From Magallana gigas (taxonomy: Eukaryota): a stretch of DNA of 64,000 nucleotides. Location of the stretch: positions 30,008,001-30,072,000 of the forward strand of contig NC_088858.1 of NCBI RefSeq assembly GCF_963853765.1. Direction: 5' to 3'. Position numbers and translations under genes: made by a program. The notes beneath the pieces were generated by a model. That model saw nothing but the letters and a program-made list of their open reading frames with translations. It searched no databases and had not been told where the DNA came from. Every line of letters begins with the position of its first letter. The stretch's first letter is position 1. Shown in pieces: positions 151 through 50,823 of this stretch.

Positions 151-3100
151 GCATCAATTCATACAAATAGCTCTGTTTATACAGGAGTTGTATCAGTACC
201 ACCAGAATGTGCTTCAGCTTGAGACCAAAGGTATCACACAGCCGCGCTCTCCCCGTGTTCTCACCACACAGCTGCTACAGACACTGCTGTCCATTCTACA
301 ACAGAAGCCCGTCCTTGGCCACACACTACTACAGTCTCTCAATGCTAAATCAGAACACGAACAGTACAAGAAAAACAACAAAGTATTACAGCTTCTCTAC
401 ATCAAAGCCATCAGTGGAGTATTGGATAAGATCTCACATCCCACTCACCCTGTGCTGGAAACTGAAGGAAATTTATCTAAAAATGAAGTGGAGAATCCAG
501 TATCATCTTTGGATAATAACCTGCAGAGTTTATATCAGATCCTTTCAATGTTTAATCCCAATTCCTATGAAAATTACTCTGAAATTCGAGAGATTTTTGG
601 CAGATTGCTGGAACTATCTGGGGGAGAAATACCTAAACTTAACAGGAAATCATTGCTATCTGCTCTTATTGGGGGAAAAGAAAATTATTTGGTACTGGAG
701 TTTCTCAAGTTGGAATATGAGATTTATGTAAAGACCAATGGTTTTCCGCCCAATATTCGTGATGATGATGCCACAGAAGAGACCAAAGTCATGTTGAAGG
801 TTTCAAAAGAAAACGATGTCAGGGAAAGAATGCATCATATGTTTTTGCGGTGTTACATCAACAAAGAGCATTTTCTTTATACTGTTGTGGTAAGAAAATT
901 GGGCTGTTAAAAAGAAACAAAGGGAAGGAAAGGACATCCATATTTAAAATACAATTATGTTAATGTCATACTCAGCATTAAACAGCTAGAGAAAATGATG
1001 TAAAAACCTTTTCTTGTAATTTTTTTTACAGAACACAGCAATTCTGTTGATAAAGCATGGGCTATTTGAGGACTTGAGTCAGCTGCTAGCATCAGCCAAG
1101 TTTGATCACTTGAGACCATTTCTGCTTCTCCATGGATGGTCTTATTGTCATTCCTGTGCCCAAGCAAAACTCTTGCTGGACACTCTGAAAACTGAACAGG
1201 TATTAACATAACGGAAATAGATGTCAGTTAGAAGGCAATGGTGTTAGATAGATAATACAATGGTGATAAATAGCTGTAAAAAATTAAAGTTTGTGTAATT
1301 AATTTGTTTTGCTCAATGTAGTGGAAAAGTTCCCACCCTGTGCTGGAGAGTGCATGTGGAAAGCTGTCCTACCAGATTGACCTCATCCAGTGGTGTCTGG
1401 ACTGGACAAAGTATGTTTGTAAATCTACAAGATAAATACATGTACTACTTTAAATGTCCCAGTAATCATGGAATAATATTAAGCATTTTAGAGTTATGAT
1501 TGTTTGTGGGAAGCTCAGTTTTTTTGTGTAAATGGTGGGTAACAAAAATCCAGTTCTTTTTTTCCCTCTTTCAACAGTCATTTATACACCCTGAACAGTA
1601 GCTTGGCACCAATAAAATTACTATTTCTTTAAGCAAAATTTTGGTTTTTTTGGTGGTGATGGAGGGGAAGAGGGGAGGGTAACAGTACTCTTGCAAGCAT
1701 GATAACGAATGAGCTGTAAACATTCATGATGACTGATTGATACATGCTAAAGTATTTGCATTGCTTTTGTAAGGCCACTATTGCCTGTTTCTGAGAAAGG
1801 TCAAGCCAGTTCCAATCAGCGAGCAGCAGACATGTTTACAGGGCTGGAAAACCACTCAGTATTGTACGTACTGCATCAATCAACTCGTCTCGCTACACTC
1901 GATCAACAAGATGTCCTGAACCTGCTACATAAAAGTCCTCTTCAGAACAACCCTGGTAAAGCACAGTACTTTTTCAGTCCATTTTTTCAAAACTGCAATT
2001 TTGTTGATGCAACTTCATCTTACATACGTAATTAATTAGACCTATAAATACTTACTGTAAATGATTATATTTAGCATGATTGTACAATATTTGGCAAAAA
2101 ATGGTTTTCCAACAAGTTATAGTAGATTTGAATTAGTGTTTATTGCAATGTCCCAATTCTTATGTGTTCACACTTGACATTTAGCGAGGACTTGATTAAG
2201 CGGGAGTGTCTTTCAGTCAAAACACCGAAAGGAATACAAAGCCAAATGTAATATGTTAGTAGTACCCAGGGTTTTATCTTTTTATAATGCTATAAAACCA
2301 CCAGAGATATTCTGTCAATAAACTTTCATCCATGTTCAATATTTGACTTTTAAGCTCATCTGAGCTAAAAGCTCAAATGAGCTTAACTGATCACTTTTTG
2401 TCTAGTATACATATGTCTGTTCATTTGTAAACCTTTTGCATTTTTGGCTTCTCCAGAACCACCTGGCCAATTTCAGCTTAACTTGGCACAAAGCATAATT
2501 GGGTAAAGGGGATTTCAATTCTGTTAAATGAAGGGCTACATCCTCTTTCAAGGGAGATAATTAAGAAATATTGAAAGCATGTATGAAAGCATCCAATGGT
2601 AAGGTAGATTCAGGTTTGTTCAAATCATGATCATGAGGGTAGGGTTGGGCCGCAATTGGGGATTAATTTTTACATAGTTATATATAAAGTAAAATTCTAA
2701 CAAAAATCTTCTATAAAACCAATTGGCCAGAAAAGCTGTAACTTGTGTGGAAGCATCCGTAGGTTGTATAGATTCAAGTTTATCCAAATCATAACCCCCT
2801 TGGGTTTGGTTGGGTCACAATAGGATTGGGAGTCAAATTTTTACATAGGTAAAAAAATTGAAAAATTCATGTGTTATAGAATATGGTATTACTTATATCC
2901 AAATCCAAGTATCTTGAAATTTGTTGACCATTCTCAATTATTGTTAAGAAGGTGGCCCCTGAAGGATTTTTTGGCCACACAAGGTTTATATTTAAAAGAA
3001 CAGTTGTTATTTTTAGATCTTCCTGAGAACTGAAATGCTCAATATGTGATATTGTATACTAGGAATCATTACAATGTTTCAACAATGTTTAACATAAGAA

Positions 3101-6100
3101 TAGCTGGAGAAAATTTTGAAAATCTTTTTATACAGAATCTGTTTTACTATTTTGTTCCGATATTTTGTATATGATCTTTAAAGCTGATTTATTATAGCTG
3201 TTGTTGCCCAAGCAAGTGATGTGGCCCATGGGCCTCTTTCTTAATGTTTGAAATGTAAATATTCAATACCAATTCCTTTATGTATACCCACTAATTATTT
3301 TTTTTTAATGATCAATCTGTCATGATTCCACATACCTGTATGAATTTAGTTACATATGTATAAAATATTCACATGCTTTATAATTGTAGATTCAAACAAA
3401 GCTCCAAAGGCAGTGAGGTTTGAGAGAGACAAGGTAATGGATGAAGTTCACATAGAGAGACGAAGAGACATTTCAATCTACACAGGTTACTGTGCAATCA
3501 AAAATGTAATGGATGCAATTTATTTTTGTGCTGAGTGTGTTCATGAAAAACTGGTTAATCCTGTACAAGAATCCAATTCTGTGACTCCCTTGGAACACAT
3601 GATTTCTATCATGCTGTCTTCTGGTGAATCTGGACTTTCTGACACAGGTTACAATTTCCAGGAAGAATACTCTAAAAATGTGACAGAAAAACTCAATGGT
3701 GCCAAAGTCTCCTTAAGTAGACTCCAACCTCTTACATTCAGGACAGAGATTTTAGAAAACATATTTTCTTTGCTTTTTCTTTCCCATGAGGACATTCAGG
3801 AGTCATCAGCTATTTTTGATTCTGACAGTGATATGGAAGATGATGAACGAAGGAGAGGCGATACTATCGTTGGTCATGCAAGTTTGAGTCAGAGTTTATT
3901 GTCGGAGGGAAGCACTTCCTCCCCATCTTATAGTGTAGATGAGAGGACCATGAGTGAGGAAGTCATAGAGGAGGTCAGCTCGAGTTATACTGGGGGCTAC
4001 GATGAACCGTTTGTGGAGGTTGTCTCAGAGGTCAAATCGAAGAGACTGGAAAGATCAGCTAGTCAAGACAGAAGTAGTAGAAGTGCCTATCTAGAGAGAC
4101 TTAACAGTTTAAAGGAAAAATTAGCCCAACAAAAAGGAGGGTCTGGGAATGGAAGTACTATAAGTACTGGGAGTACCAGCAACTGTCAGAAATTAGGCTT
4201 TCTCTGTAATGAATATTTAGTAAGGGACATTCTTTTAATGTTAAAGGAATGCTTGGTTGACCTGACTTCTGCACGGTTTCAATTACTGGGCAAAGAAAAA
4301 GAGACTTTGGGAAAATCTGTAAAGGCGGTCATTGACGTTAGACTTGAGGAGCCTCTTTCTCGTCTTGTTCAGTCAAGCGTGGATAAGGATGCCCTTCAGA
4401 GACATGTGACCCAGCTTCAGCAGTTTGTAAGTGAGGCTCAGTGGAGGTTTCAGTTGGTGTGTCATGAAAATATTCCTCAAACCCCAGGGATGGTGCTGGC
4501 CAAGCCAATCTCTTTTTCTCTTGAGGAAAATGATGAAGAAATGGCTTTTTCACTACAGCAGAAAAATGGACCGACTAAGCGAAACAGGAAGATCTCATCC
4601 TCTTCAAAAGGTATTGTATTTAAATTTAATTGCTGTTGTATTATATTGAATGGGATTTCTTGGTAATTCTGAATGTATCCAATTTTAATTTGGTTATATG
4701 TATGGCAAAGATTTTTTTTTTTGAATATTGAAATGTGCACTTTTAGATCTGAAATAAGTTTTGTTCTGTATTGATATCATCTCAAATTATCCAATGCATT
4801 TATAGAAGTAGGGCATATATGAAATTTGATTTATTTATCAAGAAGCAAAGTAAAATGAGTACATTAATTCATTGATAAGATGCCAAAGATGAAGATAGTA
4901 AGACTTGGAGAAAACCCAAAAGGAAGAGACAAAAATCTGGACAGAGAATACGAAAGTGTCTGGTTCCACAGGGAATTATATCTACCATGCTTTCCTCCCC
5001 TGAAACCCTCCTCAACATGTGTATCCGCAAACAGAACTTTAATCATGCTGCCGAGGTCATCAAGGTGGGTCTTTTCTATCCAATGCTCCGTGGAATTGTT
5101 ATTGCTTTCATGAACCATGAACAGTTTGTTTAACAATACATGTAAATCTTATACGAGACAGTTAATATCTACTCTCAGACTAGTGTTTATTTTGAAAGGA
5201 TATAAAATTGAAAACAATTATGTTAATATCATTCATAAATATTTTTTGTACGTTGTACTTAGTACATGAGATATATTTCCTATTGACACATAATTTTATT
5301 TCTATGTATGCCTTGATTTAAAATACAAATATAATTTTTTTTCCTTTGTAATAGCTGTTAAGACTTGATGATACTCCCCAAGCCAAGGAAGTAAAGTTTG
5401 CTGAAATGTTCTCCAAGAGCTCGAAGAAACTCCAGCAGCTTCCGTCTGGGCAAACTCAGGCTGTAAAACCCGGGAAAATGTCCATGAAAGGTTTGGCCTC
5501 AGTAGCGGCTGCAGGGGTAGCAACAGTTTCTGTGAACAGTGTCGCGGAGGAAATTCTGTCCGAGAAAAACATTCCCATGATCCCAAGTCCAAGGTCAAGA
5601 CATGTTGTTCCTGTGAAATATGCAGATTTTTTCAACCAAAATAACGTTTTTATGATGATTTTATTTGACATGTTGTGTACCTCTTGCAAGTCTTGGGAAA
5701 CTTGCAACAGTCTGATCGACATAATCAAAACAAAGATGGAGGTCAAACCAGTGAAATCTCACAATAGAGATGACAAACAGAAGACGGACAGCAGAATTCA
5801 ATGGATTTCTACTCTGGTGGAAAAGTTTGAGTCTTTGCTTCAGTTGGCAGGAGATATAGACCTGACAGCACCAGCTTCACAGAAAGATGTCCTCACTGTG
5901 TTATACAAACACAGCATTCAGACTTTCCTGCAGACAGCAACTCTGCCCCTTTTAAAGGATGACTGTTTATCTTATGCCAATTTGTTAATAGAAATGAAAA
6001 AAGTCATAGAAAGAACAGAACATGCATTTCAGCTGCATGGCAAAATGCCTTTGGAAGGATACATTCACAAATCTCCGAAGGCTAGTCCAGGATTCAGTCC

Positions 6101-9100
6101 TTTCAAAGTCAGCCCCAGGGATAGCCCTCACAGCAGTCCCAGGCCTTCCCCTAAAACAGAGGACCCCACACAGACAGATAAACCAGTCCTTCACAATGCA
6201 ATGAAACTCTTGATTCATGTGATGCAGAGAGAGGTTCCCAAGGGAGGAGTGTGTACGTTACTGACTGGGTAGGGGTTTTTCAACAAATCTGCATCTAAGT
6301 CACAGATATGTTTTAGCTTTATCAGTGAGAAAACTTTAACTTTAAATACAAATTTAAAGTAACTTTTGGTTTAGATTTTTCTGTCTGAAACAAATTTTTT
6401 ATATATTTATGGGATTTTGATTTTACCCTACAGTTCACCTCCATCTGTGACTGGAAGTAGGGATTATTTACAGAACTTGTATGATCACCTAAAGGGCCTG
6501 GCTTTTGTTGTAGCGGAAACAGAGGCGAAATCTAGTGGTATGATTTCATGTGATTCGTAATTTGACTGTTAGATGCTTTATGTCTTATCTAAGTACCCAT
6601 ACATGTAGTTTTACATTTCACATTTTGCTGGTCACTCACCATTATATATTTACTGAGTATATACCGGGTAATATAATAACCATATATAAAAGTATTGATT
6701 AAATACATGCTTGCTTGTTTTAATTTAAATTTAATTTAATTTCAGATTCCATGATAACACCCAAAAATTACTTTCACATGTTGTCAGAGGGACCAATAGA
6801 GACTTTGGGGAGATTAATGTTTTCTCTGAGAATTTTTCCAGAAAAGTAAGATCATTTTAAACCTATCAATCATTTCAAGATATTAATATATGATTATCAA
6901 TAGGTGCAAATACTTAGCATAAAATTGTTGATAGTACTTTAAAAATCACAACAAATACTTACCAAAAGTTTATTGATACTTAGCATAAGATTTTTGTTAG
7001 TTCTTTAATAATCACAACAAGAATCGTCAAGACTGAACATTTTTGACTGACACCTCTTCTGGAAGAGACATCAGTAAAAAAAAAAAAAAAATCTCAACAA
7101 ATTTTGCTGAGATTAGTTCTTTGACAACATCAGAAGATTTAATCAAAGATCAAATGAACTGTGATGTTCTTGAAGTGAACAGTGAGTCTTTTATTTGCTT
7201 ATAGGTTGGAGAAAGTGGCCAAGAAATTAAGTTTAAGCCTGACCCAGATCATTGTCCAGAGCTGTTGCACCAACATTCCAAGTAAACTCCCACTAAAACA
7301 AGGTACTCAAAGTCATTAAGCACCAACATTGAAAACTACATGTACATTTAGTTCAGTTAATAGTTGAGTGAGGCTATTATGAAGGGTGACATATTAGCTT
7401 GAATAGATTAGTGGTAGAGTTTCTGACTTTGGTAGAATTGCAAGGGTCTGAAGCTCAATTTAGAGTGTCCACCAATTTTATTTTCACCATGTTTTATATT
7501 CTCCCTTACCTGTTATATATATGTACATATAAAGTATTATTATATGACTACGGTCATTGTATTTTTCACATTCAGAATTCTGTATTTAATAGTTTTATTA
7601 GCTGACAATTTATTTTTGCTTACTAGTATTTTTTTTCAACACAAAGAAGTTTCATAATTTATTGTTTTTTAATTTTACAGATATAAGTGAAGATATTTCT
7701 GAGGAAGTATTAGAAAAAAGGGTAAATGTGTCATCAGAGAGTCCGGAAACAGTCGTCCGAAATATTTTAACTCATTTAGTGCATCTAATGAAAGGTGTCT
7801 CGGCAAAGAATAACCCAAAGTGTGTGTTTGACATTTCCTGTGCCAAAATATTGGTAAGGCTACCGGAATACAAGGAGCTTATGGCAGGAATTGAGGCCTT
7901 CAGAGATCTTGATTTAAACTTGTTAAAGTCCAGGAATGAAAAACTGTGTTTCCATGGCAACTTGCAAAATCTTATGTTTCTTCATATGTGCTTGGATGAT
8001 ATTGACAAAGCTACCTCTAATACAAAGGATCTCAGTAACAAAATTTTTTGTGAGGTGTGTGAAATGGAGAAAATTTTACGCATGAATCTTTTCAGTTATA
8101 CCATTGGGCAGCTGGGAAAAGTAAGGTAGAAATCAATTTACTTGCCGCATTTTGATACTTGTAGTTTATGCTGAGAAAAAAAAATATACCTAATGTGTAC
8201 TACCTTTCATGATTCATCTTATACAATCATGTATTTGTAAGTTTTTCACATTAGCTACTTTATCAGAAGCCATTATTATGATATTATAAAATGAATTCAT
8301 TTATATGTTATAAAACACATCTCAGTTTGCTTTGATTCTTTTCCAGCTTGTTCGATTTAAAGTTTGTTCTAAATCGGTTGGGTCTTCCACCCCCAGTAGA
8401 ATTTGGCAACATATTGAGGCGTCGTATGTCTGGTAAATATCTAGGAAATACCTGTACAATCATATCAATTTCAATGATTTAAGCAAAGCGTGTATACAGC
8501 TGACCATGTAGAAAATTAGGAACATATACATTTTATATAACCAAGGTCATCTTTTTTAGATCTGGATAAATGTGACCCTTGGACTAAGTTTGCCTTACAG
8601 CCGGAGCCCCGCCTTCTCTTTGTGACCACTTCCTGTGCTGAGTCCTCACCCCCTCTTCAGGTCAGTACATCTGTCTCCATGCAACCACTGATTTAGATAA
8701 AATTAGTAAATAAAAAAATTATCCATTTAAAATACCCAATTGTACTCGTAAATACAGTTTAAGTACCTGTAATTGCCTTACTGTGTAAGGATAAAGGGAG
8801 TGTATTCATTTTGGCCAGGTTTAGATAGATTTGATTTTCCCTAGAATAGCTATAACATTTAATTTACATTGTAAATCTATGTACAGTAGTGCACTCCTGT
8901 GCATCTTTTATTGTCTTTCAGATTCTAAACCCAGAGCTAGTGAAAAGTCAGCTGCAGTCTGCCATGAAAGAGTATCTTATCCATTGGGTCCAGATTGACA
9001 AGGCTAATAATACAGTATGTGTATACTTTTAAAAAATCCATCCTCTTACTTTTATGTGTAGGCTGAATAATAGATGGTAATTGTAGAATTTTGTGCCTAA

Positions 9101-12100
9101 AAAAATGATGAAAATTGGGGGTGGGAGGTCGGGGGATTCCTTGGACATATACTGGTATGTGTATATGTTCATGTTTATTTTTCATCTTTGTAAGTATGTC
9201 AAAATGAACTAAAGTCAAAGCAATTTGTTTTCTGATTAATTAAGTTTGTTTGCCCCTAAGATCACCCTCCCCGAGCTTCTGATGTGGTACAGACAGGACT
9301 TTAGCAGTGAACAGGAGGTATTCACAGCAGAACACGAGGGGATCCTCCATGTGGTAGAGGGGAACACCACAGGGTCAACACAGGCAGCCCTCAAAGAAAT
9401 GTTACAGATGGACAAGGTTCATGGTTACTCGGAGAGCATAGGTTAGTTGGTTTACCTAAGTTAATGTATTTATATTACTGTATTTATTCCACCCCAAAAT
9501 TGTAATCCTGAATGAAAGTATGCCTGGAAGACTTCATTTTTTTCTTGATGTTTTAAGAAAGAGGGGTGGGGAAATTTTTCTGTTCTTTCCTTTTTTATTT
9601 CCTTTAAAACCTGGGATGCATTTTATAAATTTGAAGAACTTATGACTTAACAAATTAAATAATGCTTATTAATTTCAAACTAATTAATATTTGACTTTAA
9701 TGGGCTGGAAAATATAAAATAGGGTAAATTGATAATTTTATAAATAAATTTTGTTCATCAAAAATCATTCCGCAAGACTGAAAATAATTACGACTTTGTC
9801 GTAAGTTCTTCTGTAAAACACAGCCCAGTTCTCTTTCTTTGGCACCTAAATTCTGTGCATGCCTATTGAATGCTCAATATCTTGTAGATACAACTGGGAG
9901 GAAAGAACTTCCCTTTAAAGTCCGGACTGCCAAATTTCGGAGCCACTTTTTGGTTAAATTTGACAAAGAGTATAGTACTTCGACTTCTGCTTCCTCAACA
10001 CCTACAATGGCCGCTCTCAAAACACATAGACGAGTTACCTCTCTTCCAGAGAATATGGATCTTTCGTTTGAACTCAGTGGTGAAAACAAGAAAAACAGCT
10101 CTATGAAGTATCAGTTAACTCCCGTAACATTGGAATACATCAAGGATGAGAGCCCCCTGGTGGCCACCTTAGTTAGTCTGGTGTGTATGGATGAGCTGGA
10201 CGACATCGAAGAACATCTGAATGTTGACTACTTCACAGGAAGTCTTCGGAGTCGATCCTCCTCAGAGATGAGTCTGGTGGACATTAAGAGCTATAGATAT
10301 CAAAAACTGACTCGAGACTATCCCATACTTAAGGGCCACATTCTAAGCTTTGTGATTCCTGTGGCTGGGGCAGAAGATCCGGAAATTTTGGGAAGTGCAG
10401 ACCCCATTCTAAAATTCATTTCTAACAATATATCAGACAGAGTGAAAGTGTGTATGCTTAATTTACATACCAGCAAGGAGTATCAAGTCACTTTAATGAA
10501 GCTGTTGGAGGATCTGACTAGAAAGGGAAAATGGTGGAATGTGATGTCACTCCTGGAGAGTATACCTATCATGGTTACAAGGAAGCATCCTGACCTCTGT
10601 GTCCTTCATGATTTTGCCTTGACCTGTTGTGTGACAGGCTTGGTCAGAAAAACCCAGCCCTTGACCAGATCTCAGATAGAGAAAACAGTCAGCTGTTTGC
10701 ACAAATTTTTGGACAAGGAATTATTTGTACATTTGTTGATGTCGGTGTACAAGAAGTTGCCCTTAGAAGAGAGTTGTGAACTTTTTGACCTGGCCTACTA
10801 TACACATATACATGAATCTCTGCATTCAGCAGTGAGCACAAAAATCAAGGAGTTGCAAATGTTTCTCAGAGTAAGTTCTTGTAAATTTATAAGGATTATT
10901 TAAAAGTTTTAATTAAGGAAGTGGGTATACGAGGGTCAATCAAAAAATACGAAGACTTTTGTCATAGCTATGCTACTTAATGTCATATCATTACTAAATT
11001 TGGTAGACATAATTTAGCAATAGTTTCAAACAATTTGCAAGAAAAAAGTGAATAAATTCCTTTATTTCTAAGAATTATTTAGAATCTAATCCTGCAAAAA
11101 TGAGATCACGGCACACGGTCAAAATTTTTGTAATGTCAACAATAAATCATATAATGTTGAAAGTAATATCTCAATAAATTGGGCTTCAAACCAAATAATA
11201 TTGAAACCTCAAATTAAGTTTTGTCTTGGTATTCTATGTTCCAAATAATGACGGGATGCATTTTTTTGTCGAACAGATATTAGTAACTAAAGACAGATAG
11301 TCCTCTTTAGAATTGACTAAAAACATCAACGTCGCCGGACATCACGGCGCAACGAGAGGTACAAAAAAATGAATTTAACCCAGGAAAAAGCCGACACAAG
11401 TTTTGAAAATGTTCAATGGTGCAAAAAATAAGTCAACAATTATTTGCAAGTTTGTGTTTAACTGTGATAAATTTTGTGGGGGTGATGGTAATTGTATTTT
11501 GAATATAAAACAGTCCGAAAGAGAGTCGAATATCTGTAAATATTTGGTGAAAAAATAAGTAACGTCAACCGATCGACGTTCGGGGTTATCCTTACTGTAA
11601 ACTAAGAGATACACAGTTAGAAAATGAAAACTTTGAAGAACTAACTTATGATTCTCGAACAAATGTGTGCAAATAAGATGTTAAGTGGTTCAGTGCAATC
11701 TTAAATTGTAAGGAGAACGGCACAAGAGACTAAACAGGATATAAAGATGGGGTATATCTATAAACTGTGCCTGTTTAACTTTAACGTCATGCTTTGAACG
11801 TTACCCTGCACCGTGATGACAAAACATGTTGTTTTTAAAAAGGGGGTAACAAAAATACCGTTTCATCAAATGGACTAAAACTTCGCATATCAATAACATA
11901 AGTGTTGGTGCGCAGATTAATCTGTTAAGTATGACTTTCATGAAAAATGTATGATAGACAGCCACATTGTCTTCGTATTTTTTGATTGACCCTCGTACAT
12001 GTACATGAAGTAGAAAAGCCCAAAATCAATTCTGAGTTTGAATCCCTATTTAGCAGCTTATAACCTAGATATCCCTCTTTACCATTTCAGATTGTTCTTT

Positions 12101-15100
12101 GAAGTTTATTTTCCTGGTTTGAATGAAACTACCGTAATTATACTTAATAGTCATTCTTGAATTTCATTGTACTTTAAACTTTTAGGTAACGGAATGTGCC
12201 AAAACTCTACAGTTCAAGCTTTCCAGTGGAACTTCCTTTGAGAAGCTGGAAAAAGAAGATATTGAGGGTTTGGGGCAGTTGTCAGAGTGGAGAAATGTCC
12301 AGGATCCAACACAGGCCAGTAGTGTGTTGTCTGTGTTACTCAGAACAGGGGACTACGAGACAGCCAAGCGCTGGTGTGCTTATGTCAGCTTTCCACAACA
12401 AAAGTCTTTGGTAATTAGTGAACATTATATAAATAGTGCCTGTTTGGGAGGGTAACAGTTGAAATTGACACCCCGAGAAAACCATTGTCAACCGACGCGA
12501 AGCGGAGGTTGACAATGGTTTTCGAGGGGTGTCAATTTCAACTGTTATCCTCCCAAACAGGCACTATTTATTTTGTTATACTGAATGTCTTTTTTAAAAT
12601 TTTTAAGAAAATTTTACTGCTTTTATATAGGAATAACGTGAATTCTACAGCGAACCGTACGCGCATAATTTTCGCGCATGTAACATTTTTTAATGTTACC
12701 CGTTGCCAAGTGCGTTGCTAACGCTGAGGGTAATAGCAGATATTATTAACTGCGTCTTAACCAATCAGATTTCAGTATTTAACATGAAAGTATAACAATA
12801 TATAAATAGTGCCTGTTTGGGAGGGTAACAGTTGAAATTGACACCCCGAGAAAACTTCGTGTCGGTTGACAATGGTTTTCGAGGGGTGTCAATTTCAACT
12901 GTTATCCTCCCAAACAGGCACTATTTATTTTTTTATACTGAATGTCTTAATTTTTAAGAAAATTTTACTGCTTTTATATAGGAATAACGTGAATTCTACA
13001 GCGAACCGTACGCGCATAATTTTCGCGCATGTAACATTTTTTAATGTTACCCGTTGCTAAGTGCGTTGCTAATGCTGAGGGTAATATAAAATATTATTAA
13101 CTGCGTCTTAACCAATCAGATTTCAGTATTTAACATGAAAGTATAACAATATGAATAAATATCAATAAATTTTAATATTTTACACATGTTTTGTTTGCTC
13201 AAGATTTTCATATGTATTGTATCTTTTCTTTAGGATGTCATAGAACATCAACTGTTCACACTTCTGGAAAACTCCAAGTCTAATTCAACCAAGTCATTTA
13301 TGGTGAGTTTTAAATTGACCATTAAAAAATGAAAACAAGCTATACTGGTAGATTTTTTTAAAAATCCATTATGATCTTGGAAGAACTGAATGATACAGTT
13401 TTTAACTCTCCCAATGTCTGTCATTCTTGTTCATTAGATATTAGAGGAATTGAAACAGACCAATGAGAAGGACTGTTGCAGAATCTGTGAGAATTTGCTG
13501 GAGAAATTGACCAGTCAGAAGGACTGTTTGTTTGTGGTGACTTACATGATAGAGCATCTGACTGGGGTGTTGACAGAGGAAAGAGTGGATGTTCTCCATC
13601 AGACACAAATTGGCTGTGAGGTTAGTTCATTTTAGCACACATATCTCCTACCCTCTCCTCGTTCTCCTCCATATATATTCCAACATCAGATAATCTGAGT
13701 GTCATCACTTTGATATACATGTACATGTACCGGATACCAGTGTACTTATTTTATGTTTTATGAGTATAATATTCAGCCAATTGTATGCTTTGAAATCATG
13801 TTTATTCTACGCATTAATATCATTTGATTCCAGATGTTGCTTTGCATGCCAGAGCCGTTTGTTTGTGACTATCGCCCTCTAGTGTCAGAACCAAAACTGA
13901 TGTTAGAACAGCTGCTGATGAACATGAAGGTATGAGTACCTGTTGTACAGAAAACCGGCATGGCATGTCTCTTTTCCTTAAATAAACAAATTAGGGTTGG
14001 AATATATCTGCTCAGTGATAGCCTCCTTTATTTATTTTTTGTAAATCAACCAAAATAGACTAAAGGTTTGACTTAATATGACATTGTGTAAAATAATAAA
14101 AAAGATAAGAAATAATATCTATGAATTTTAAATTAAAATCCTGTCTGGTGATCCAAACTTTAAATCATTGGGTTTTTCTACACTAACATTTAGTGATTTT
14201 ATCACACTAAAATTTTATTATTATTATTATTCTTTAACAAATGATTCATTGAAAAATATAACTGTTTGATATCATCCTAAAAACATCCAATGAATAATCC
14301 TAGTTAATCAGAAGTTCCTTTTTTGGAATCAATATGAATACCTGTAAATAGATTTAAAAAAAAACCCAGCTGTTACAGTAGTACTATGATAGCTAGGAAG
14401 TATAATTTATAAACAAATTCTTTATCTAGGTTGAGCTAGCTAGTCAGGCTTTTCAGAAAGTCCAATATAAACTGGAGAAACTGAGAAGTTCTGCTCAAAG
14501 GTTCACACAGCAAGATTTTAACAAGTTGATAGCTGAATATGCAACAAAGGCCCTGGAGTTTATTGTCATACAGTATGCAGAACTCGGTGAGTGTAATGCA
14601 AGTTAAGTTACATGTAAAGAAATATTCTGTTAAGACTTTAATCGCATTTTTCATTGTTGACTTTATGCTTTGGTACAAACTATTCCTCAGACAAAGATCG
14701 CTCACAGTCTCAACAATCGAACGCCTCAGATGGCTCCTCAGATAAGTTGGAGGGAACAACAGACAAATCGCCTACAAAGAGAACTAGTTTATCGGAGTCC
14801 GTCAGAATCAGGAGGAGCATTGATTACACAGGTCAGAATTCTAATCGGAGTTGATGAAAAGTAGGACAATGTGACAATAGGTCTCCTTCTCTGTAGAATT
14901 AGATGATCAAGAATATCATGCTTGTGATCTCCAGTAATATTTTGTCACTTAAAGAGTTGCCAAGCTTTTTGGATTCAAATGAGTGATTTTTTTTAATGGT
15001 GTCTTCTTCTTACCCATTAAGATATACAGTAAAATTTGTTTTAGTATTAACACAGATATAGTGAAAGCCAGCCAAATTTTGTAAAGTCCCTAGCTGGCAA

Positions 15101-18100
15101 AATTTCTAGCAAATCATTCTAAAATGTAGTAGTTAAACAAGCCAGGTTATATTAATTTTTTTGATATAGTAAACTTATTTTGAGTTTGTAGAAGTGAAAA
15201 AATAATGAAATTTACATCTTTTAAATGTAATACTTATAGAATTACTAATTGATGTTATTTTTTGAATAAATTTATTACCTCATAAAGCCTTCAATTTACA
15301 TTTTGGTTACATAAGGTTTCCTAAAAAATTCATTTTCATTATTATGAAACACCCCCATTAAATTGTAGTTTTTGGTAGAAGAAAAACTGTCAATCATATA
15401 ATTATTTACTATACTTATAATTACAAGTTCGCTATACATATTTAATGAATTATGGAATACGATATACATGTAGTGAAGTAAACCCACTGTTCCCTAGGTC
15501 TTCACTATTACCAAGTTTTCCTGTATGTGTTTGATAGATATTTATCAGCTAAATTTTTAGGTTATAGCTTTTTCATTCACTCACAGAAAATTTATTATAA
15601 TTTGTCAGCTATCTTAGTTAAATATTCCACTAAAGGTATTTATATAATTGTTCAGTTTTTCTGTTTTTGCCTGACTGAATTACAGCATTCATCTATTTCT
15701 GCGATATTTTTTTTGTCTGAATTTTACTTATTATCCTTGCTCCATGTACTTTGCAACATCCTTTTGCATTCATAATTTCAGACTTCTTTTAATTAGGGTT
15801 AATGTTTGAAGGACAATGAAAATGCTTCAAGAAGTTGAAAACATACTTTGTGAACCTTGCATTATAATCAATATCCATGCATGCTGCTTCAATCTATGAT
15901 GCATGCAGTTCATACAGGAAATGATTAAATGCTGTATTCAAAGAAAACTGACATTTAATTAATACTTTCTGGTACATGTTATTCAACATGTTCAAGAGGC
16001 AATCTAATTTATCAAATATGAATGCAATTGATGCTTGTAATGTGTATTGAGTGAGGCGATTTAAGTTTTAGACGTTCTGCTTTTTATATACTGTTAATAT
16101 ATACATGTATTATAATAATCAAATCAATATATTCTAATCCACAATAAAAATTATATACCGGTATTCCAATGTACTCATAATTTTTAAACATTTAACAACA
16201 GGGCTATATATAGTCACCCTACAATATGATCTAATGGGGGGGGGGGGATTGTCTCTTCAGAAACACTTGAAGACTCATTCAGATCCCCCAGTTCAGCTTA
16301 CCGGTACTATAATTGCATTAAAACTCTATTGTTATGTTAAATATGGCATCATTTTATTTCACTTCCTCGTTTTATTTTAGTCATAAAAAGGGTTTACATG
16401 TATTTCAGATCAACCTTGACTGTTAGACATTCATGTATATTAGCAATTTAAAAAGTTCACTGAAGTTGGTTGGTCAAGTGATCAAATCCTGTGAAGCCTG
16501 AAGGGCTTCTCATTAGATTTGATCAAGTACCAACCAACTTCATATCCCGAAGAACTTTTTAACATTGCTGTTTATTACTTATATTTACGTCTGAGAAAGA
16601 GAAATTGTTCGGAACTATTAATATTAGCGAGATTTTATGCTTATAATAATCCAAGCAACAAGCGATAAGTGCATGCTATGATCATTGTGACGTCATGAAA
16701 AAGTTCATACAGAATTGAACGTTTTCTATAGGTTCATATAAGGAAACATATTTGCAAATGTAAATGTATCAATATAAATATCAGAAAGATTAAAGTTTGA
16801 AACACCTTTCGTAATTTTTCAACTCAGTTCATGTACATATTTGACAAGATGTATTAATAGGTTAAATTGATATTGAAAACCACATTAATTAAAAAGAAAA
16901 ATTAATCCTTGAAATTTTTATGCCCCCCTTCGAAGAAGGGGGGCATATTGCTTTGCTGTCTGTCGGTCAGTCGGTCCACCATCAGTTTCCGTTCATTTTC
17001 TTTGCAAAGGATGAACATATTGAAATGAAATTTGGTATACAGGTTTATCATGATAATATCTAGATCAAGTTCAATATTGGGTATGATCGAGCAATTTTCG
17101 ACAGAGTTATGGCCCTTTGACTTAGAAAAATTTTTGAGTTATTTGCAGTTTCTGGTCATTTTCTTCGCATAGGATGAACATATTGAAATGAAATTTGGTA
17201 TACAGGTTTATCATGATTATATCTAGATCAATTTCGATATTGGGTATGATCGAGCAATTTTCGACAGAGTTATGGCCCTTGGACTTAGAAAAATTTGAGT
17301 TATTTGCAGTTTCGGGTCATTTTCTTCGCATAGGATAAACATATTGAAATGAAATTTAGTATACCCGTTTATCATGGACGTAGAAAAATTTGAGTTATTT
17401 GCAGTTTCCGCTCATTTTCTTTGCAGAGGGTGCACATATTGATATGAAATTTGGTATACAGGTTTATCTAAATAATATCTAGGTCAAGTTTGATTTTGGG
17501 TGTGATAGAGCAATTTCCGACAGAGTTTTGCCCCTTGGAATTCCAAATATTTGCAGTTTACGTTCATTTTCTTTGTGCCTCTGGATGTTTCCAAGGGAGG
17601 GGGGCATAAGTGTTTCACAAACATCTCTTGTTATTTCATAAGCTTACTTATGCAAGTAATTAAATATGCTGATTAAATTAAAACTTGTTACATGGACATG
17701 TACACTGTCTTTGGATTAAGTTAACTTTAAATTTACTGCTTCAGTCTCCATCATCTAATAAAAAACTCTGACTCAAAATTTCTTTTGTTTCTCCACAATA
17801 CTTTATCTTTGGATTTAATTTTTTTGTGTTGAAATGTTGAAATTCTGTATCTATTATTAATTTAACCCTAAAAGAAAATTTCTAAATAATATTTAAAGAT
17901 TAAAACTTCTTTCATATCTATATACATGTACCGGTATATATATATTTTTTTTATGAATTATTAGGTTTTAACAGACATCCTCTCAGTCAAAGTCCTAGCA
18001 TAGGTTCTGTTGTCAAGAGCAACAAAATTAACAAGTTTGTGATGCCAGCTGAGCCCCCACCCAGAGAAAAATGGCAGCCGGACAATGCCACACAAACATG

Positions 18101-21100
18101 CATGGTCTGTCGAGTCGAGAGATTCAGTATGGTAAGTATTTTGATAATAACTATAATACTATATACGGTAAGTGAAAAGATCTTCAAAATACATGTATAC
18201 ATTCATTGTGCTTTAATAAATATCTATAGATTTCTGACCATTTTGTAAATTCTAGTACATTGTAATAGAATTAAGTTTCATCATTTGCCCTCTGCTTTAT
18301 TATATTATGTATCTTCGAATGACATTGTCTGCATGATAAAAAGATTTTTTTAAAGACTATATAATAAATCATAAAAATAGAATCCAAAAGTTTATAGAAT
18401 GATACTTCAGTATATTGAGCTTACTTGTATTATTTCCTATTGATAAGGCATAAAATCTGTTTGGTTTGTTTAGTTCAACAGACGGCATCACTGTCGTAGA
18501 TGTGGCAGAGTTGTCTGCTCTTCCTGTTCAACAAAAACCTCATTGGTCAATGGTTTGGAGGTTAGGACATGTGATGACTGCTACGCTCAGTTATTCAATT
18601 CAAGGTAAACATATTAAGCTGACTTATTTCCAACCCATTATTAATACATGTATATGGTAAAAATTCATATCACAATATGATTAGAAGCTATCTGATAATT
18701 AATTATTTTTAAAAAGTGGTAAGCCTCTTTGGAATTTCAAGTCCTATAAATCACAATGCATGCATGTAATGATACAGTCATGACCGTCAACAGAAATACA
18801 TTAGACAGGTTTTTAAAGTCCATGCATAGAAGGAATGTTTTAAGTTATGATACCCAGTATTTTGAGTCTTATTATACCGGTAGTTAAAACTTAATGAACA
18901 GATAATCTAGCTTATATGTGTATACAAATTGAATCTGTTGTACATTGATAAATTTGATAGGCTTTTACTGATGAGGATGTATGACTCTTGGTTTTCTTTA
19001 ATGTAGAAAACCGGACGTTGAGATTTACCAGCAGTCCTCTGACAACTTGTCTGGTTCGAGTCTCACATCACGCGCATTTGGTCCAAGCTTTGCCACAATC
19101 CCAGAGCATGGGGAATCCATGAACCTTGCTGATGCTTTGCATCATTCAGAGCTGATATGGAAGCTGAAATCAAAAGACCCTGTGCATAATAAGATGGTTC
19201 GAGAGGATTTCTATTTTGAACAAGTAAGTTCATGTGAAAATTCTTAAAAGGTGTCTAACTATGCATATAAGGTTTAGAGCTAAGGAATAAAAAATTAGAT
19301 TGACTTATTTAACAGTTACTGATGTTTTTGTCAAATTGAAATATTTTAACTCGCAAAGTTTTTCAAAGTGTAGAAACTCCTTAAGTTAAATCTGTCTTTA
19401 TATTGAGTCTGCTTTGCTAATTACTTGATCTTACTCCACAGGCTCCCAGTACCTCACTGTGTCTGTCTCTGCTGGGTCTACACAGTAAGCCTCACAAATG
19501 TGGACAGCTGATGCTAGATCTGTGTGACAATCTGTCCCATTACCTGAAACCCATTGCCCCCGGGGTTCCCAACCCAGAGGTGGACTATGGACTTGTTCTC
19601 AGGTTAGCTTTTCAAATTAAATAAATATGAATGAGTAATTTACATTACATGAACGTGTACTTTAAAATGAAGGCATAATTTTTAGAATGCTAGAAAAATC
19701 CTCAAGAATTTTTCAAAATACTTTTTTTCCATTTTAGGCAAAAGTTAATTTAAAATGGACTCTTTAATTTTCATTCAATTTTTTTTTTTCAAGCATGATG
19801 AAAACTTTACTGATGCATTCCAAAATGCAGTACATCAACATAGGAGACCCTCAGGGGCTGGTGCGGTGTGAGACTTATCAGAGTCACCTTGACCTGCTCG
19901 GGATACTGGTCGAGGACAACTACACGGACCTCCCCACTCTACAGGAGCTCACCAAGAAAGACTATGTCACGTAAGCCAAGGTTTCCATAGCCATACATAT
20001 ATATTGAGGAGATAATGACTTTTTTTCATTTCTTATTTTTTGGGGACAATGCTGTCTCTTTGATTCTATTAAATATTGTCTTGAATAGATGTTCAGTGTT
20101 TCATTGTAAATGATATCTTTGGTTTCAAAACTGAAGAAGTATAAATTCATGTGAAAGTTTCTATGAAAGATTTTGACTAATTAGCAGCTCCTTGCCGTCA
20201 TCAGTTTGAAGTGTCCTATTGTGACATTCTCCGATTGTTTCATTGGTAGGCGGATGAGAGATAAGCTGATTCAGGTGGAGCGGCTCCACTTAGCAGTGGA
20301 AGTATCCACTAAATGTGGACTGGACCCAGCTGGGGTGTGGGCAGCCTGGGGAATGAACTGTCTCATTAATGGAGACTTCCCACAGGCCAGGGAAAAATTC
20401 AATCGATGTTTGAAGGTCAGCTGTGTAGTATTTTATTGTGTTACTGTTATTACAGCCTGTAAACCAACTTTTATCAGCATGCAAGAAAATTTCATGAGAT
20501 TCAGAACCTCATCATTGCAAATATTTTTGCTGGAAATTAATTGTTTTATGTCTTTTAGCCATTGTCTGACCGCAATCAAGTGATATATCCTCCCAAACTC
20601 CTAGCAGATGTGATTGACTTTCTAGAATCTACCCCATCAGCTGTTACTAAGCATGTGAGTACCGGTATATTGATTTGTAAAACTGAACCTGATTTTATCA
20701 TGTATCTCTACTACATTGATGCTGATAATGAATTTTCGTTTTTAGTTACAGCTGATGAAAACCAAAAGAGGAACGTGGCAGGATTTGTTAGCAGATCCGT
20801 TATTGGTAAGATCATTTCATTAGGCCTGCACATTCTGTACAAAAAAAGCCCTTCCCATGCATTGAATTATGCTGAAGACAAAAAAACCCTGCATTTTTGA
20901 AGTACCGTAACTGGTACTGTTAGTCTGATTTGTCATGCAGTATGTCCATTATATAATTATTGGGTGTAATGCTAGAAGAATTTATAAATATGGCACGTAT
21001 AAATATGTGACTATCAAGATACTGAATGGATATATTTACTTGGAGCTGCATCTATTTATCAGCATCTTTATTCTGTGTTTAAGGTCACTGAGGAAGGTGA

Positions 21101-49500: not shown

Positions 49501-49858
49501 TTTCCGAAATCGAAACAACATTTGTGTGGAAGTAGGCGGACAACGCCCATCTGGCCATAGGATTCCAAGTGTAAACAGAGAAGAAAATGTTGTGTGTGTT
49601 GTCATCCCGGACTATCATCCAATCGGTTGTGCTGTTGGTCAGTTCATTACGATGCACCATAACCTTTATCCCCTCAACATCACCACCCTCCAACAACTGA
49701 AGCGAGTTCGATGTAAATCCTTGTAGCATCTTCGATGTACAAGGGATATCTGGTGCAATATCACCGACACTCGCATTTGCTTTAGAATCTGAAATAACAA
49801 TTTCAGACCACGAAATCAACACGCTCAGCATCAGAAAACTCGAAATTGTATATGCCAT
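46531..49858 (-). CDS. Uncharacterised signal-peptide-bearing multi-pass membrane protein, ~997 aa, two coding exons (49858-47158 and 46823-46531)
   Basis: A 2.8-kb uninterrupted ORF has a hydrophobic N-terminus from MAYTISSF, a Cys-containing ectodomain and about 9-11 hydrophobic segments. A donor (GACA|GTAAAT at 47157) and an acceptor (TTTTGCAG|GG at 46824) are both phase 1 and join the 101-aa ORF at 46531-46836 in frame. I recognise no known domain. Confidence 0.85.
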
Positions 49859-50823
49859 TTTCTTCTTATCTTCTCTGTTAATATTGCTTATTGTAAAATC
49901 CCACACACTACGCAAATTTGTGGAAATGCACCCTGCATTTCACCTGCAAAAATCTAATTTAACATGTCTTAAGTCTTAATCAAGTATATAGCAGTGTCGT
50001 TGACAGAAGGTAAATTAATACCCAGATAATCTTTCACGAATTACACAAGAAGTGCAATCAAGCGAGGCATTGATTGACTGTTCTTGTAGTTTAAAAGTAA
50101 ACCTTTTATCTTAGACTGAACGGCAAATAATCATATCAAAGCACACACAAACAATACACAATGCCTCAATAATAGCTACATGGTTGATAATAAAGGGGGG
50201 TTTAAATCTACATGAAATATTTACAATAGTAAAGTCTTGTACACAAGTGCTTTGTACTGCATTGGTCCTGGATTGAATGAACATTTCACATTTTCACTTT
50301 GCACGGCTTTTGGGGATTTTTTTGAATTTTTGTTTTTATTCATTCTAGATTCATAGTGTTTTATCATATATATTATGTGTTGTTTGTGACAAAATTATAA
50401 TTCAGACTGATAAATAATAATACATGATCAAACACATAATAAAAATCAGTTCTTTGGCAATGATAGGTCCGTAGCAGTCATGATGGCGGTGTAAAGGGTG
50501 TGGGGGGGGGGGGGGGGGGGGGAGAGGGGGTGAACCGTTGGACTTCTAATTTTTCGAAACATCTACAACCTAACCGTACAAACGTAAACTGATTTACAGT
50601 ATATCATAAAAAATAATTCTTTAAACTTTTTTTTTCAATTGATAAATCTTAATCTAAGGAGGATAAAAGTATTGAATTTGATTAAAGATTTAAGAAACAG
50701 ATTTATAACTACCCATCCCATCGTTGGAACCCACGGTTATTCTATCCTTAACACTGCTTTCAACAAATGGGTTGAAGCAGTGTATGAAACCCGTGGATTC
50801 CGACGATAGGATGAGAGCAGTTA

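What the first reader, a model, noticed from the sequence alone, without database searches (positions are those of the whole stretch)
7681..9412. Spastizin (ZFYVE26) carries an in-frame DUF547-like domain
Seen: five phase-compatible exons in the middle of ZFYVE26 splice into a peptide with the DUF547 blocks in order (EKLCFHGNLQNLMFLH, YTIGQLGKVSLFDLK, EPRLLFVTTSCAESSPP, LPELLMWYRQDF). Ordinary spastizin exons flank them on both sides. The exons in the window sum to about 3000 aa before the missing N-terminus. Knowledge: human spastizin (~2540 aa; AP-5/SPG11/SPG15 lysosome-recycling complex) has no annotated DUF547 as far as I recall. DUF547 is a function-unknown domain known from bacteria, plant MIP1- and glutaredoxin-DEP fusions and some animals. 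Inference: this is either a lineage-specific domain fusion or an ancestral architecture lost in vertebrates. Either way it ties DUF547 to PI3P-positive endolysosomes. The second Cys of the usual CxxxSCPP is replaced (SCAESSPP), suggesting altered chemistry.
Basis: partly seen in the sequence, partly recalled or inferred. Interest (0 to 1): 0.8.

Follow-up and report, generated by a model that had tools for sequence, protein, structure and literature searches.

The report
Oyster spastizin carries ancestral DUF547 domain
The oyster version of the spastic-paraplegia gene ZFYVE26 (spastizin) really does contain an extra, transcribed, roughly 300-residue DUF547 domain; the same domain is present from sea anemones to amphioxus and was cleanly deleted in vertebrates, so it is an old feature of the protein that public databases annotate automatically but that no searched paper discusses.

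Summary

- **Exons and transcript.** Five exons (7681-8125, 8347-8432, 8560-8660, 8922-9014, 9261-9441) total 906 nt, or 302 codons, between two phase-1 introns. RNA contigs from three studies and raw polyA reads join them to each other and to both flanking exons. No exon-skipping junction was listed.
- **Gene identity.** The gene spans window 170-24072 on the + strand. It is a ZFYVE26 orthologue with its own FYVE and TPR_ZFYVE26 exons.
- **DUF547 membership.** The spliced peptide could not be passed to Pfam, so this rests on proxies. A 75%-identical Saccostrea orthologue scores 48 bits on PF04784 (cut-off 27). An AlphaFold model (pLDDT 88) matches only DUF547 proteins in AFDB clusters.
- **Evolution.** Orthologues from cnidarians, molluscs, an annelid, a nemertean, a priapulid, a scorpion, echinoderms, hemichordates and amphioxus carry the domain. 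All 93 vertebrate-length homologues fetched lack it and have a 30-90-residue linker at that site. The architecture is therefore ancestral and was lost in vertebrates; it is not a lineage-specific fusion.
- **Cysteines.** The second canonical Cys position is Ser in all 37 orthologues and in the oyster. The first is not conserved either.
- **Function.** Still inferred. The most likely role is a non-redox binding module near the membrane.
- **Novelty.** Visible in public Pfam annotation; found in none of the searched papers.

The parts
170..24072 (+). ZFYVE26 (spastizin/SPG15) orthologue, about 34 exon pieces. The N-terminal ~127 residues lie upstream of the window.
   Evidence: tblastn of Saccostrea cucullata ZFYVE26-like P0164 residues 128-3057 is colinear with the window, 48-93% identity per piece and mostly 65-90%. 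Exon 5406-6269 hits human ZFYVE26 8yad_C residues 901-1120.
7205..7302 (+). Upstream flanking spastizin exon, spliced to the first DUF547 exon across a phase-1 intron.
   Evidence: Junction 7302>7681 in RNA contigs of X1 and X5. Matches Saccostrea residues 1295-1331.
7681..8125 (+). DUF547 module exon 1: N-terminal helices, the F..N..N....H motif, a variable insert and YTIGQLGKVS.
   Evidence: Pfam PF04784 at E 0.0055, 17.1 bits, profile positions 5-34, on this exon alone. phmmer finds ZFYVE26 orthologues at residues ~1400-1600.
8347..8432 (+). DUF547 module exon 2.
   Evidence: Junctions 8125>8347 and 8432>8560; Saccostrea residues 1482-1505.
8560..8660 (+). DUF547 module exon 3, with EPRLLFVTTSCAESSPPLQ. 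This is the site of the canonical CxxxSCPP motif, here SSPP.
   Evidence: Translation; column statistics show Ser in 37 of 37 orthologues at the second Cys position.
8922..9014 (+). DUF547 module exon 4 (ILNPELVKSQLQSAMKEYL...).
   Evidence: Junctions 8660>8922 and 9014>9261, also seen in raw polyA reads.
9261..9441 (+). DUF547 module exon 5 (ITLPELLMWYRQDF...). It ends at 9441, not 9412.
   Evidence: Only the 9441 end (donor GTTAGT at 9442) keeps the frame open. Junction 9441>9888 in three contig sets and one raw read.
9888..10874 (+). Downstream flanking exon. Its first ~25 residues still belong to the conserved module; the rest is solenoid.
   Evidence: The open frame continues. Saccostrea residues 1632-1964 at 76% identity. 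RNA contigs span it.
18474..18605 (+). FYVE zinc-finger exon (second half of the domain).
   Evidence: PF01363, 48.2 bits, E 1.2e-12.
23259..24072 (+). C-terminal TPR_ZFYVE26 exons (23259-23450 and 23920-24072).
   Evidence: PF25569, 36.8 and 74.2 bits.

Best explanation
Window 170-24072 (+) encodes the oyster orthologue of ZFYVE26/spastizin/SPG15. Exons 7681-9441, plus the first residues of exon 9888, encode a compact alpha+beta DUF547 domain of about 320 residues. It is constitutively spliced into the middle of the protein's alpha-solenoid, about 800 residues upstream of the FYVE finger.

**Shown.** The architecture solenoid-DUF547-solenoid-FYVE-solenoid-TPR_ZFYVE26 is the ancestral eumetazoan state, found from cnidarians to cephalochordates. 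Vertebrates deleted the module and kept a 30-90-residue linker at that site. The domain keeps most DUF547 family motifs (F..N..N....H, Y.vGQLG, S-PP, WY..DF). It evolves at about the same rate as the rest of the protein.

**Inferred.** Both canonical cysteine positions are changed, the second being invariant Ser in the whole clade, so thiol chemistry is unlikely. Elsewhere DUF547 is fused to PH, DEP, RasGAP, PTEN and glutaredoxin modules. The most likely role is therefore a non-catalytic binding module for a ligand or protein at the membrane. It would give the invertebrate AP-5/SPG11/SPG15 coat a second contact or regulatory site beside the PI3P-binding FYVE finger. Vertebrates either dispense with this function or have moved it elsewhere.
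For: **Splicing and transcription**
- All six junctions are seen and no skipping junction was listed.
- The spliced open frame is 663 aa.

**Gene identity**
- FYVE and TPR_ZFYVE26 exons lie in the window.
- A window exon hits human ZFYVE26 in the PDB.
- Saccostrea ZFYVE26-like is colinear with the window.

**DUF547 identity**
- PF04784 is over the cut-off across profile positions 5-125 in the Saccostrea orthologue (48.1 bits) and in Nematostella (53.9 bits).
- The excised domain regions of 10 of 10 other orthologues also pass (27.9-66.7 bits).
- The AF2 model has pLDDT 88 and pTM 0.87.
- The top 30 AFDB cluster hits are either named DUF547 or MIP1/DEP/PH/RasGAP proteins or unnamed; none carries another family name. 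Probability is 1.00 and TM 0.55-0.65 over model residues ~5-325.
- 99 of 100 ESM-Atlas feature hits are DUF547 clusters.
- The ZFYVE26-type profile recognises the exons of the oyster's own canonical DUF547 genes.

**Ancestral state and vertebrate loss**
- Precomputed Pfam lists PF04784 in every invertebrate row and in no vertebrate row.
- Amphioxus 795-1403 aligns to primate 677-1232 and amphioxus 1764-3100 to primate 1295-2525. Amphioxus against Nematostella is colinear end to end.
- Eight vertebrates show the same gap.
- 54 long homologues have the domain and 93 lack it; the best E-value among those lacking it is 2.2.
- There is no profile hit to human 8yad_C and no Foldseek hit in the PDB or Swiss-Prot AFDB.

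**Cysteines**.

**Partners present in the oyster genome**: Spatacsin_C and SPG48 families.

**Fusion contexts**: AFDB hit names; PTEN-C2-DUF547 in Entamoeba (10.1101/2021.11.29.470399); a plant MIP1-DUF547 protein at a polar plasma-membrane domain without any transmembrane segment (10.64898/2026.08.17.745151).
Against: **Function is untested.**
- No member of DUF547 has a known activity.
- No solved structure resembles the model; the best VIA Z of 5.6 is at noise level.
- The membrane-binding reading rests only on domain co-occurrence.

**The window's own peptide was not scored directly.**
- The full spliced peptide could not be passed to Pfam by reference. Its first exon alone scores 17 bits, below the cut-off.
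- A six-frame PF04784 scan of the genome did not pick up this locus.
- Membership for the window's own sequence therefore rests on the 75%-identical Saccostrea orthologue and on alignment to the orthologue profile (358.6 bits).
- The structure model is of the Saccostrea sequence, not the window's.

**Gaps in the survey.**
- Tunicates, cyclostomes, insects, nematodes, sponges and non-animals were not sampled, so neither the exact point of loss nor the age of the fusion is fixed.
- Whether the Cys pair is essential in canonical DUF547 proteins is unknown.
Confidence: 0.9

Rival explanations
1. The DUF547 module is a lineage-specific (mollusc or lophotrochozoan) domain fusion acquired by exon shuffling.
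For: The five exons are a symmetric phase 1-1 block of exactly 302 codons, the pattern expected of a shuffled module. Vertebrate ZFYVE26 lacks it.
Against: The same domain sits at the same position in Nematostella, an annelid, a nemertean, a priapulid, a scorpion, echinoderms, hemichordates and amphioxus. Amphioxus and Nematostella proteins align colinearly through it.
Confidence: 0.02
2. Vertebrate spastizin still has the domain, diverged beyond Pfam recognition, so nothing was lost.
For: ZFYVE26 evolves fast. Oyster exon 9890-10900 finds no PDB hit on its own.
Against: Only 30-90 residues lie between the conserved flanks in eight vertebrates, against about 350 in amphioxus. The orthologue profile with all filters off gives a best E of 2.2 in 93 vertebrate-length proteins. 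There is no hit to 8yad_C. No Foldseek hit appears in the PDB or in Swiss-Prot AFDB models, libraries that should include human spastizin (8yad_C is in the PDB sequence copy). Pfam finds nothing in primate residues 1100-1400.
Confidence: 0.02
3. The exons are a nested or alternative cassette: a separate gene, or a minor isoform, and not a constitutive part of spastizin.
For: Skipping the 906-nt block would preserve the reading frame because both flanking introns are phase 1.
Against: Single RNA contigs run from 7205 through all five exons (X1, X5), and from 7928 to 10344 (X4). Raw reads support four of the junctions, and no 7302>9888 joint was listed. Annotated orthologues in many species include the block.
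Confidence: 0.04
4. The module is an active enzyme that uses the retained family residues (N, H, Y, S-PP, WY..DF), with Ser replacing Cys as the nucleophile. On this reading spastizin in invertebrates is a coat-tethered enzyme acting on a lipid or small molecule at the lysosome.
For: F, N, H, Y and S columns are invariant across 37 orthologues spanning cnidarians to chordates. Ser at the canonical Cys position is 37 of 37. PTEN-DUF547 and glutaredoxin-DUF547 fusions place the family beside enzymes.
Against: No DUF547 activity has ever been reported. No structural similarity to any solved enzyme was found. Invariant residues can equally well be structural or ligand-binding.
Confidence: 0.2

Closest known systems
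Human/vertebrate ZFYVE26 (spastizin, SPG15; PDB 8yad chain C; AP-5/SPG11/SPG15 complex)
   Same: It is the orthologous gene. Both have a FYVE finger, the C-terminal TPR_ZFYVE26 domain and colinear alpha-solenoid flanks. The partner genes for spatacsin and AP5Z1 are present in the oyster genome.
   Different: Vertebrate proteins are about 2540 aa against about 3060-3200. They have a 30-90-residue linker where the oyster and other invertebrates have the ~320-350-residue DUF547 module. The cryo-EM description is solenoid-FYVE-solenoid with no such domain (10.1101/2024.06.14.598999).
Invertebrate ZFYVE26-like proteins in public databases (e.g. Saccostrea cucullata P0164, Mizuhopecten P0061, Branchiostoma belcheri XP_019625924.1, Nematostella P0057)
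   Same: Same architecture, PF04784 + PF01363 + PF25569, with DUF547 at the same position. Saccostrea is 75% identical over 663 aa.
   Different: Nothing of substance. The window's gene is an ordinary member of this group. In Argopecten the whole-protein DUF547 score falls just under the Pfam cut-off (24.3 bits), which shows how divergent this subfamily is.
Canonical stand-alone or fused DUF547 proteins (PF04784): the oyster's own paralogues on contigs C5 and C7; plant MIP1-leucine-zipper and GRX-DEP-DUF547 proteins; protist PH-, RasGAP- and PTEN-DUF547 proteins
   Same: Same predicted fold over about 300 residues (TM 0.55-0.65, probability 1.0). Shared motifs are F..N..N....H, S-PP and WY..DF, with reciprocal profile recognition.
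   Different: The module is embedded in a 3000-aa solenoid. Both cysteines of the canonical VCGAKSCPP are replaced: the second is invariant Ser and the first is variable. A 30-45-residue variable insert interrupts the core. The locus is too divergent to be picked up by the six-frame genome scan.

Membership tests
DUF547 (Pfam PF04784) | Match to the PF04784 profile at or above the gathering score (27 bits) over most of the profile. | tested here: met
   Met by proxy. The Saccostrea orthologue, 75% identical to the window's peptide, scores 48.1 bits over positions 5-125. The excised regions of 10 of 10 other orthologues score 27.9-66.7 bits. The window's exon 1 alone scores 17.1 bits over positions 5-34, below the cut-off. 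The full spliced window peptide could not be submitted by reference. It aligns to the orthologue profile at 358.6 bits.
DUF547 (Pfam PF04784) | Same three-dimensional fold as other DUF547 proteins. | tested here: met
   AF2 model of the Saccostrea domain has pLDDT 88. The top 30 AFDB cluster hits are DUF547-type or unnamed proteins, at probability 1.00 and TM 0.55-0.65 over residues ~5-325. Both sides of the comparison are predictions.
DUF547 (Pfam PF04784) | Cysteine pair of the CxxxSCPP motif, as in the oyster's canonical paralogues. | tested here: not met
   The canonical paralogue on C7 reads FALVCGAKSCPP. The window reads FVTTSCAESSPP. The second Cys position is Ser in 37 of 37 orthologues and the first is variable. 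Whether this pair defines the family is not established. From memory, not tested here: plant DUF547 proteins also lack it.
ZFYVE26 / spastizin (SPG15) | FYVE zinc finger (PF01363) in the C-terminal third. | tested here: met
   Window 18474-18605 scores 48.2 bits, E 1.2e-12. The first half of the domain is on exon 18051-18131.
ZFYVE26 / spastizin (SPG15) | C-terminal TPR_ZFYVE26 domain (PF25569). | tested here: met
   Window 23259-23450 scores 36.8 bits and 23920-24072 scores 74.2 bits.
ZFYVE26 / spastizin (SPG15) | Colinear orthology with vertebrate ZFYVE26 along the solenoid. | tested here: met
   Window exon 5406-6269 hits human 8yad_C residues 901-1120 at E 3.8e-5. Window to Saccostrea is colinear. 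Amphioxus to primate is colinear on both sides of the module.
ZFYVE26 / spastizin (SPG15) | Forms a complex with SPG11 and AP-5 on PI3P-positive late endosomes and lysosomes. | not testable with these tools
   Only the presence of the partner genes was checked: Spatacsin_C at C6:48.08 Mb and SPG48 at C7:35.0 Mb.

The most novel reading that the evidence does not exclude
DUF547 is an original working part of the AP-5/SPG11/SPG15 coat in animals, and possibly in older eukaryotes. On this reading it is a membrane- or phosphoinositide-linked ligand-binding or Ser-based catalytic module that vertebrates discarded. That would give this orphan domain family its first pathway assignment, and would mean the vertebrate complex studied in hereditary spastic paraplegia is a reduced version.
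Probability: 0.3. Interest if true: 0.65.

Novelty: new member of a known kind. Interest (0 to 1): 0.42.

Why it matters
Spastizin is a hereditary spastic paraplegia protein and part of the least understood adaptor coat, AP-5/SPG11/SPG15. All structural and cell-biological work on it uses vertebrate proteins, which turn out to lack a conserved globular domain of about 320 residues that the ancestral animal protein had.

DUF547 is widespread in bacteria, plants, protists and invertebrates and has no known function. Its conserved presence in spastizin places it in a defined, assayable pathway: lysosome reformation on PI3P-positive membranes. Tractable invertebrates are available for testing.

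The gain is a comparative-genomics lead, not a new kind of system. The architecture is already in automatic database annotation.

Tried and rejected
- **Pfam on single exons.** Only exon 1 gave a weak DUF547 hit; exons 2-5 are too short.
- **The spliced peptide** has no reference and was not typed in, so Pfam and AF2 were run on the Saccostrea orthologue instead.
- **PF04784 six-frame scan of the genome** found only two canonical DUF547 genes, on C5 and C7, and not this locus.
- **PDB sequence searches** with exon 1 and with the downstream exon found nothing relevant. The orthologue-domain profile against the PDB gave no ZFYVE26 hit.
- **Structure searches.** Foldseek against the PDB and Swiss-Prot AFDB, and VIA-align wide, gave no meaningful match, so no functional lead came from solved structures.
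- **The third protein search**, with the Nematostella domain region, added no new taxa. Tunicates, cyclostomes, insects and non-animals therefore remain unsampled.
- **Literature.** No paper holds DUF547 together with ZFYVE26, and none of the papers listed for DUF547 with spastizin or SPG15 holds both. No paper holds spastizin, Drosophila and 'domain of unknown function' together. The three PF04784 papers concern plants only.
- **Readings rejected:** nested gene or cassette exon, lineage-specific fusion, and a cryptic vertebrate domain (see the rival explanations).
- **Complex prediction** was not used, because no specific partner for the domain is claimed.

Full report
**1. What is in the sequence**

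The window is from an oyster genome: 564 Mb in 29 contigs, with the window at C6:30008001-30072000, and the RNA runs are labelled oyster.

Reading 7000-10200 and splicing by AG/GT sites gives five exons: 7681-8125, 8347-8432, 8560-8660, 8922-9014 and 9261-9441. Only a donor at 9442 (GTTAGT) keeps the frame open into the next exon at 9888.

The five exons total 906 nt, or 302 codons, and both flanking introns are phase 1.

**2. Transcription**

RNA-run contigs from three different studies and raw polyA RNA-seq reads were laid on 7150-10950. Two of the three contig runs are only guessed to be RNA by the tool.

All six junctions appear as GT..AG joints:

| Junction | Support |
|---|---|
| 7302>7681 | two contig runs; the third (X4) has a variant joint 7302>7684 with six extra letters |
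| 8125>8347 | three contig runs, no raw reads |
| 8432>8560 | three contig runs, two raw reads |
| 8660>8922 | three contig runs, raw reads |
| 9014>9261 | three contig runs, raw reads |
| 9441>9888 | three contig runs, one raw read |

Single contigs run from 7205 through all five exons, and from 7928 to 10344. No joint that skips the block was listed. Raw first mates lie on the minus strand, the usual orientation for a + strand RNA in stranded libraries. The block is therefore a constitutive, in-frame part of one transcript. It is not a nested gene.

**3. Which gene**

- The Saccostrea cucullata 'zinc finger FYVE domain-containing protein 26-like' (P0164, 3058 aa) maps colinearly, residues 128-3057, onto window 170-24072.
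- It is 75% identical to the 663-aa spliced peptide.
- The window has its own FYVE exon (18474-18605, 48.2 bits) and TPR_ZFYVE26 exons (36.8 and 74.2 bits).
- Exon 5406-6269 hits human ZFYVE26 chain 8yad_C, residues 901-1120, at E 3.8e-5.
- The genome also encodes spatacsin and AP5Z1 family genes.

This is the oyster spastizin orthologue.

**4. Is it DUF547?**

Sequence evidence:
- Exon 1 alone gives a sub-threshold PF04784 hit: E 0.0055, 17 bits, profile positions 5-34.
- An exhaustive phmmer search with exon 1 found 37 proteins. The long ones are 1554-3208 aa and match around residues 1250-1600 in the full-length (~2900-3200 aa) ones.
- The excised regions of ten of these all pass the PF04784 cut-off, nine over positions ~5-125 and one over 5-117, at 27.9-66.7 bits.
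- Saccostrea scores 48.1 bits and Nematostella 53.9 bits.
- The window's peptide aligns to the orthologue profile at 358.6 bits.

Structure and feature evidence:
- An AlphaFold2 model of the Saccostrea module, built on a 37-sequence alignment, is confident: pLDDT 88, pTM 0.87. It shows a compact alpha+beta domain of about 320 residues.
- Against AFDB fold clusters, the named hits among the top 30 are all DUF547-type proteins (DUF547, MIP1 leucine zipper, DEP, PH, RasGAP) and the rest are unnamed. Probability is 1.00 and TM 0.55-0.65, spanning model residues ~5-325. The structural domain is therefore much larger than the 125-position Pfam core.
- 99 of 100 ESM-Atlas feature hits are DUF547 clusters.
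- The ZFYVE26-type profile recognises exons of the oyster's two canonical DUF547 genes.

The six-frame PF04784 scan of the genome found only those two canonical genes and not this locus. This shows that the spastizin version is a divergent subfamily.

**5. Evolution**

Named orthologues with the domain include:
- bivalves, gastropods and a cephalopod
- Owenia (annelid) and Lineus (nemertean)
- Priapulus and a scorpion
- crinoids, sea stars and an urchin
- three hemichordates
- three Branchiostoma entries
- Nematostella

In the precomputed Pfam column, every invertebrate entry has PF04784 + PF01363 + PF25569. Every vertebrate entry (about 2150-2640 aa; sturgeon, teleost, reptiles, birds, monotremes, mammals) has only PF01363 + PF25569.

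BLASTP gives the following:
- Amphioxus against Nematostella is colinear end to end.
- Amphioxus 795-1403 aligns to primate 677-1232.
- Amphioxus 1764-3100 aligns to primate 1295-2525.

About 360 residues are therefore replaced by about 62 in the primate. Eight vertebrates show the same gap of 30-90 residues.

With all HMMER filters off, the 37-sequence profile finds the domain in 54 of 147 long homologues. The best E in the other 93 is 2.2.

The profile does not hit human 8yad_C. Foldseek finds nothing in the PDB or in the Swiss-Prot AlphaFold models. Pfam finds nothing in primate residues 1100-1400.

The domain block is about 30% identical between cnidarian and chordate, close to the 33% for the whole protein, so it is under comparable constraint.

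Conclusion: the architecture is ancestral to Cnidaria plus Bilateria and was deleted on the vertebrate stem or earlier within chordates. Tunicates and cyclostomes were not sampled.

**6. The cysteine motif**

The oyster's canonical paralogue on C7 reads FALVCGAKSCPP. The window reads FVTTSCAESSPP.

In the ungapped and HMM alignments, the second canonical Cys corresponds to a Ser that is invariant in 37 of 37 spastizin orthologues and in the oyster. The first canonical Cys corresponds to a variable position (T/D/E/N/S). The oyster's Cys lies one position later, in a column that is Gly in 25 of 37.

In fact both canonical positions are changed. The other family motifs are kept: F..N..N....H, Y.vGQLG, S-PP and WY..DF.

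**7. Mechanism**

*Shown:* a globular DUF547 domain is inserted in the solenoid about 800 residues before the FYVE finger, and has been conserved since the cnidarian-bilaterian ancestor.

*Inferred:* with both cysteines gone, thiol chemistry is unlikely. DUF547 recurs next to membrane and phosphoinositide modules:
- PH, DEP and RasGAP among the AFDB hits
- PTEN-C2-DUF547 in Entamoeba
- a plant MIP1-DUF547 protein at a polar plasma-membrane domain with no transmembrane segment
- GRX-DEP-DUF547 in plants

I therefore favour a non-catalytic, membrane-proximal ligand- or protein-binding module that supplements the FYVE finger in the AP-5/SPG11/SPG15 coat. A Ser-based enzymatic role is the main rival.

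No DUF547 protein has a known function, and no solved structure resembles the model. This step is weakly supported.

**8. Novelty**

The architecture is visible in the precomputed Pfam annotation of public entries. No paper in the searchable library links DUF547 with ZFYVE26, spastizin or SPG15. The cryo-EM study of the human complex describes SPG15 as solenoid-FYVE-solenoid.

The oyster gene is an ordinary member of an already-annotated invertebrate group. What is worth reporting is the evolutionary pattern, ancestral and lost in vertebrates, and the pathway context it gives an orphan domain.

The confidence of 0.9 applies to the anatomy and the evolutionary pattern. The proposed binding-module function is far less certain, at roughly 0.4.

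Noticed in passing
window 9690-9830 (intron between exons 9261-9441 and 9888-10874): RNA-contig depth here is 3-5 times that of the neighbouring exons (119-209 against 30-50). Contigs break with unrelated loose ends at 9798 and 9828. This looks like a dispersed repeat or a small transcribed element inside the intron, not part of the spastizin mRNA.
   Followed up: no
window 8027 and 8586: The assembly differs from all four RNA data sets at two non-synonymous sites inside the DUF547 exons. 8027 G>C changes AAG Lys to AAC Asn in the variable insert. 8586 A>G changes AAG Lys to GAG Glu in DPWTKF. These are probably allelic variants of the sequenced individual.
   Followed up: partly
window 57314-57838 (- strand): An open frame with a Sec1 family match (PF00995, 62 bits, profile positions 306-369). 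It is an exon of a Sec1/Munc18-type gene on the opposite strand near the 3' end of the window.
   Followed up: no
window 47081-49915 (- strand): A 945-aa open frame with no Pfam match at E 0.001.
   Followed up: no
G000:C7:38444196-38445532 and G000:C5:52549723-52554585 (loci L001-L006): The oyster genome has two canonical DUF547 genes with the SCPP/SCPA cysteine motif. The species therefore keeps both canonical and spastizin-embedded forms of the domain.
   Followed up: partly
window 7302/7684: One RNA contig (run X4) joins 7302 to 7684 with six extra letters, ATATAT, between them. This suggests an indel allele or a variant acceptor at the start of the first DUF547 exon (tables 5 and 5c).
   Followed up: no
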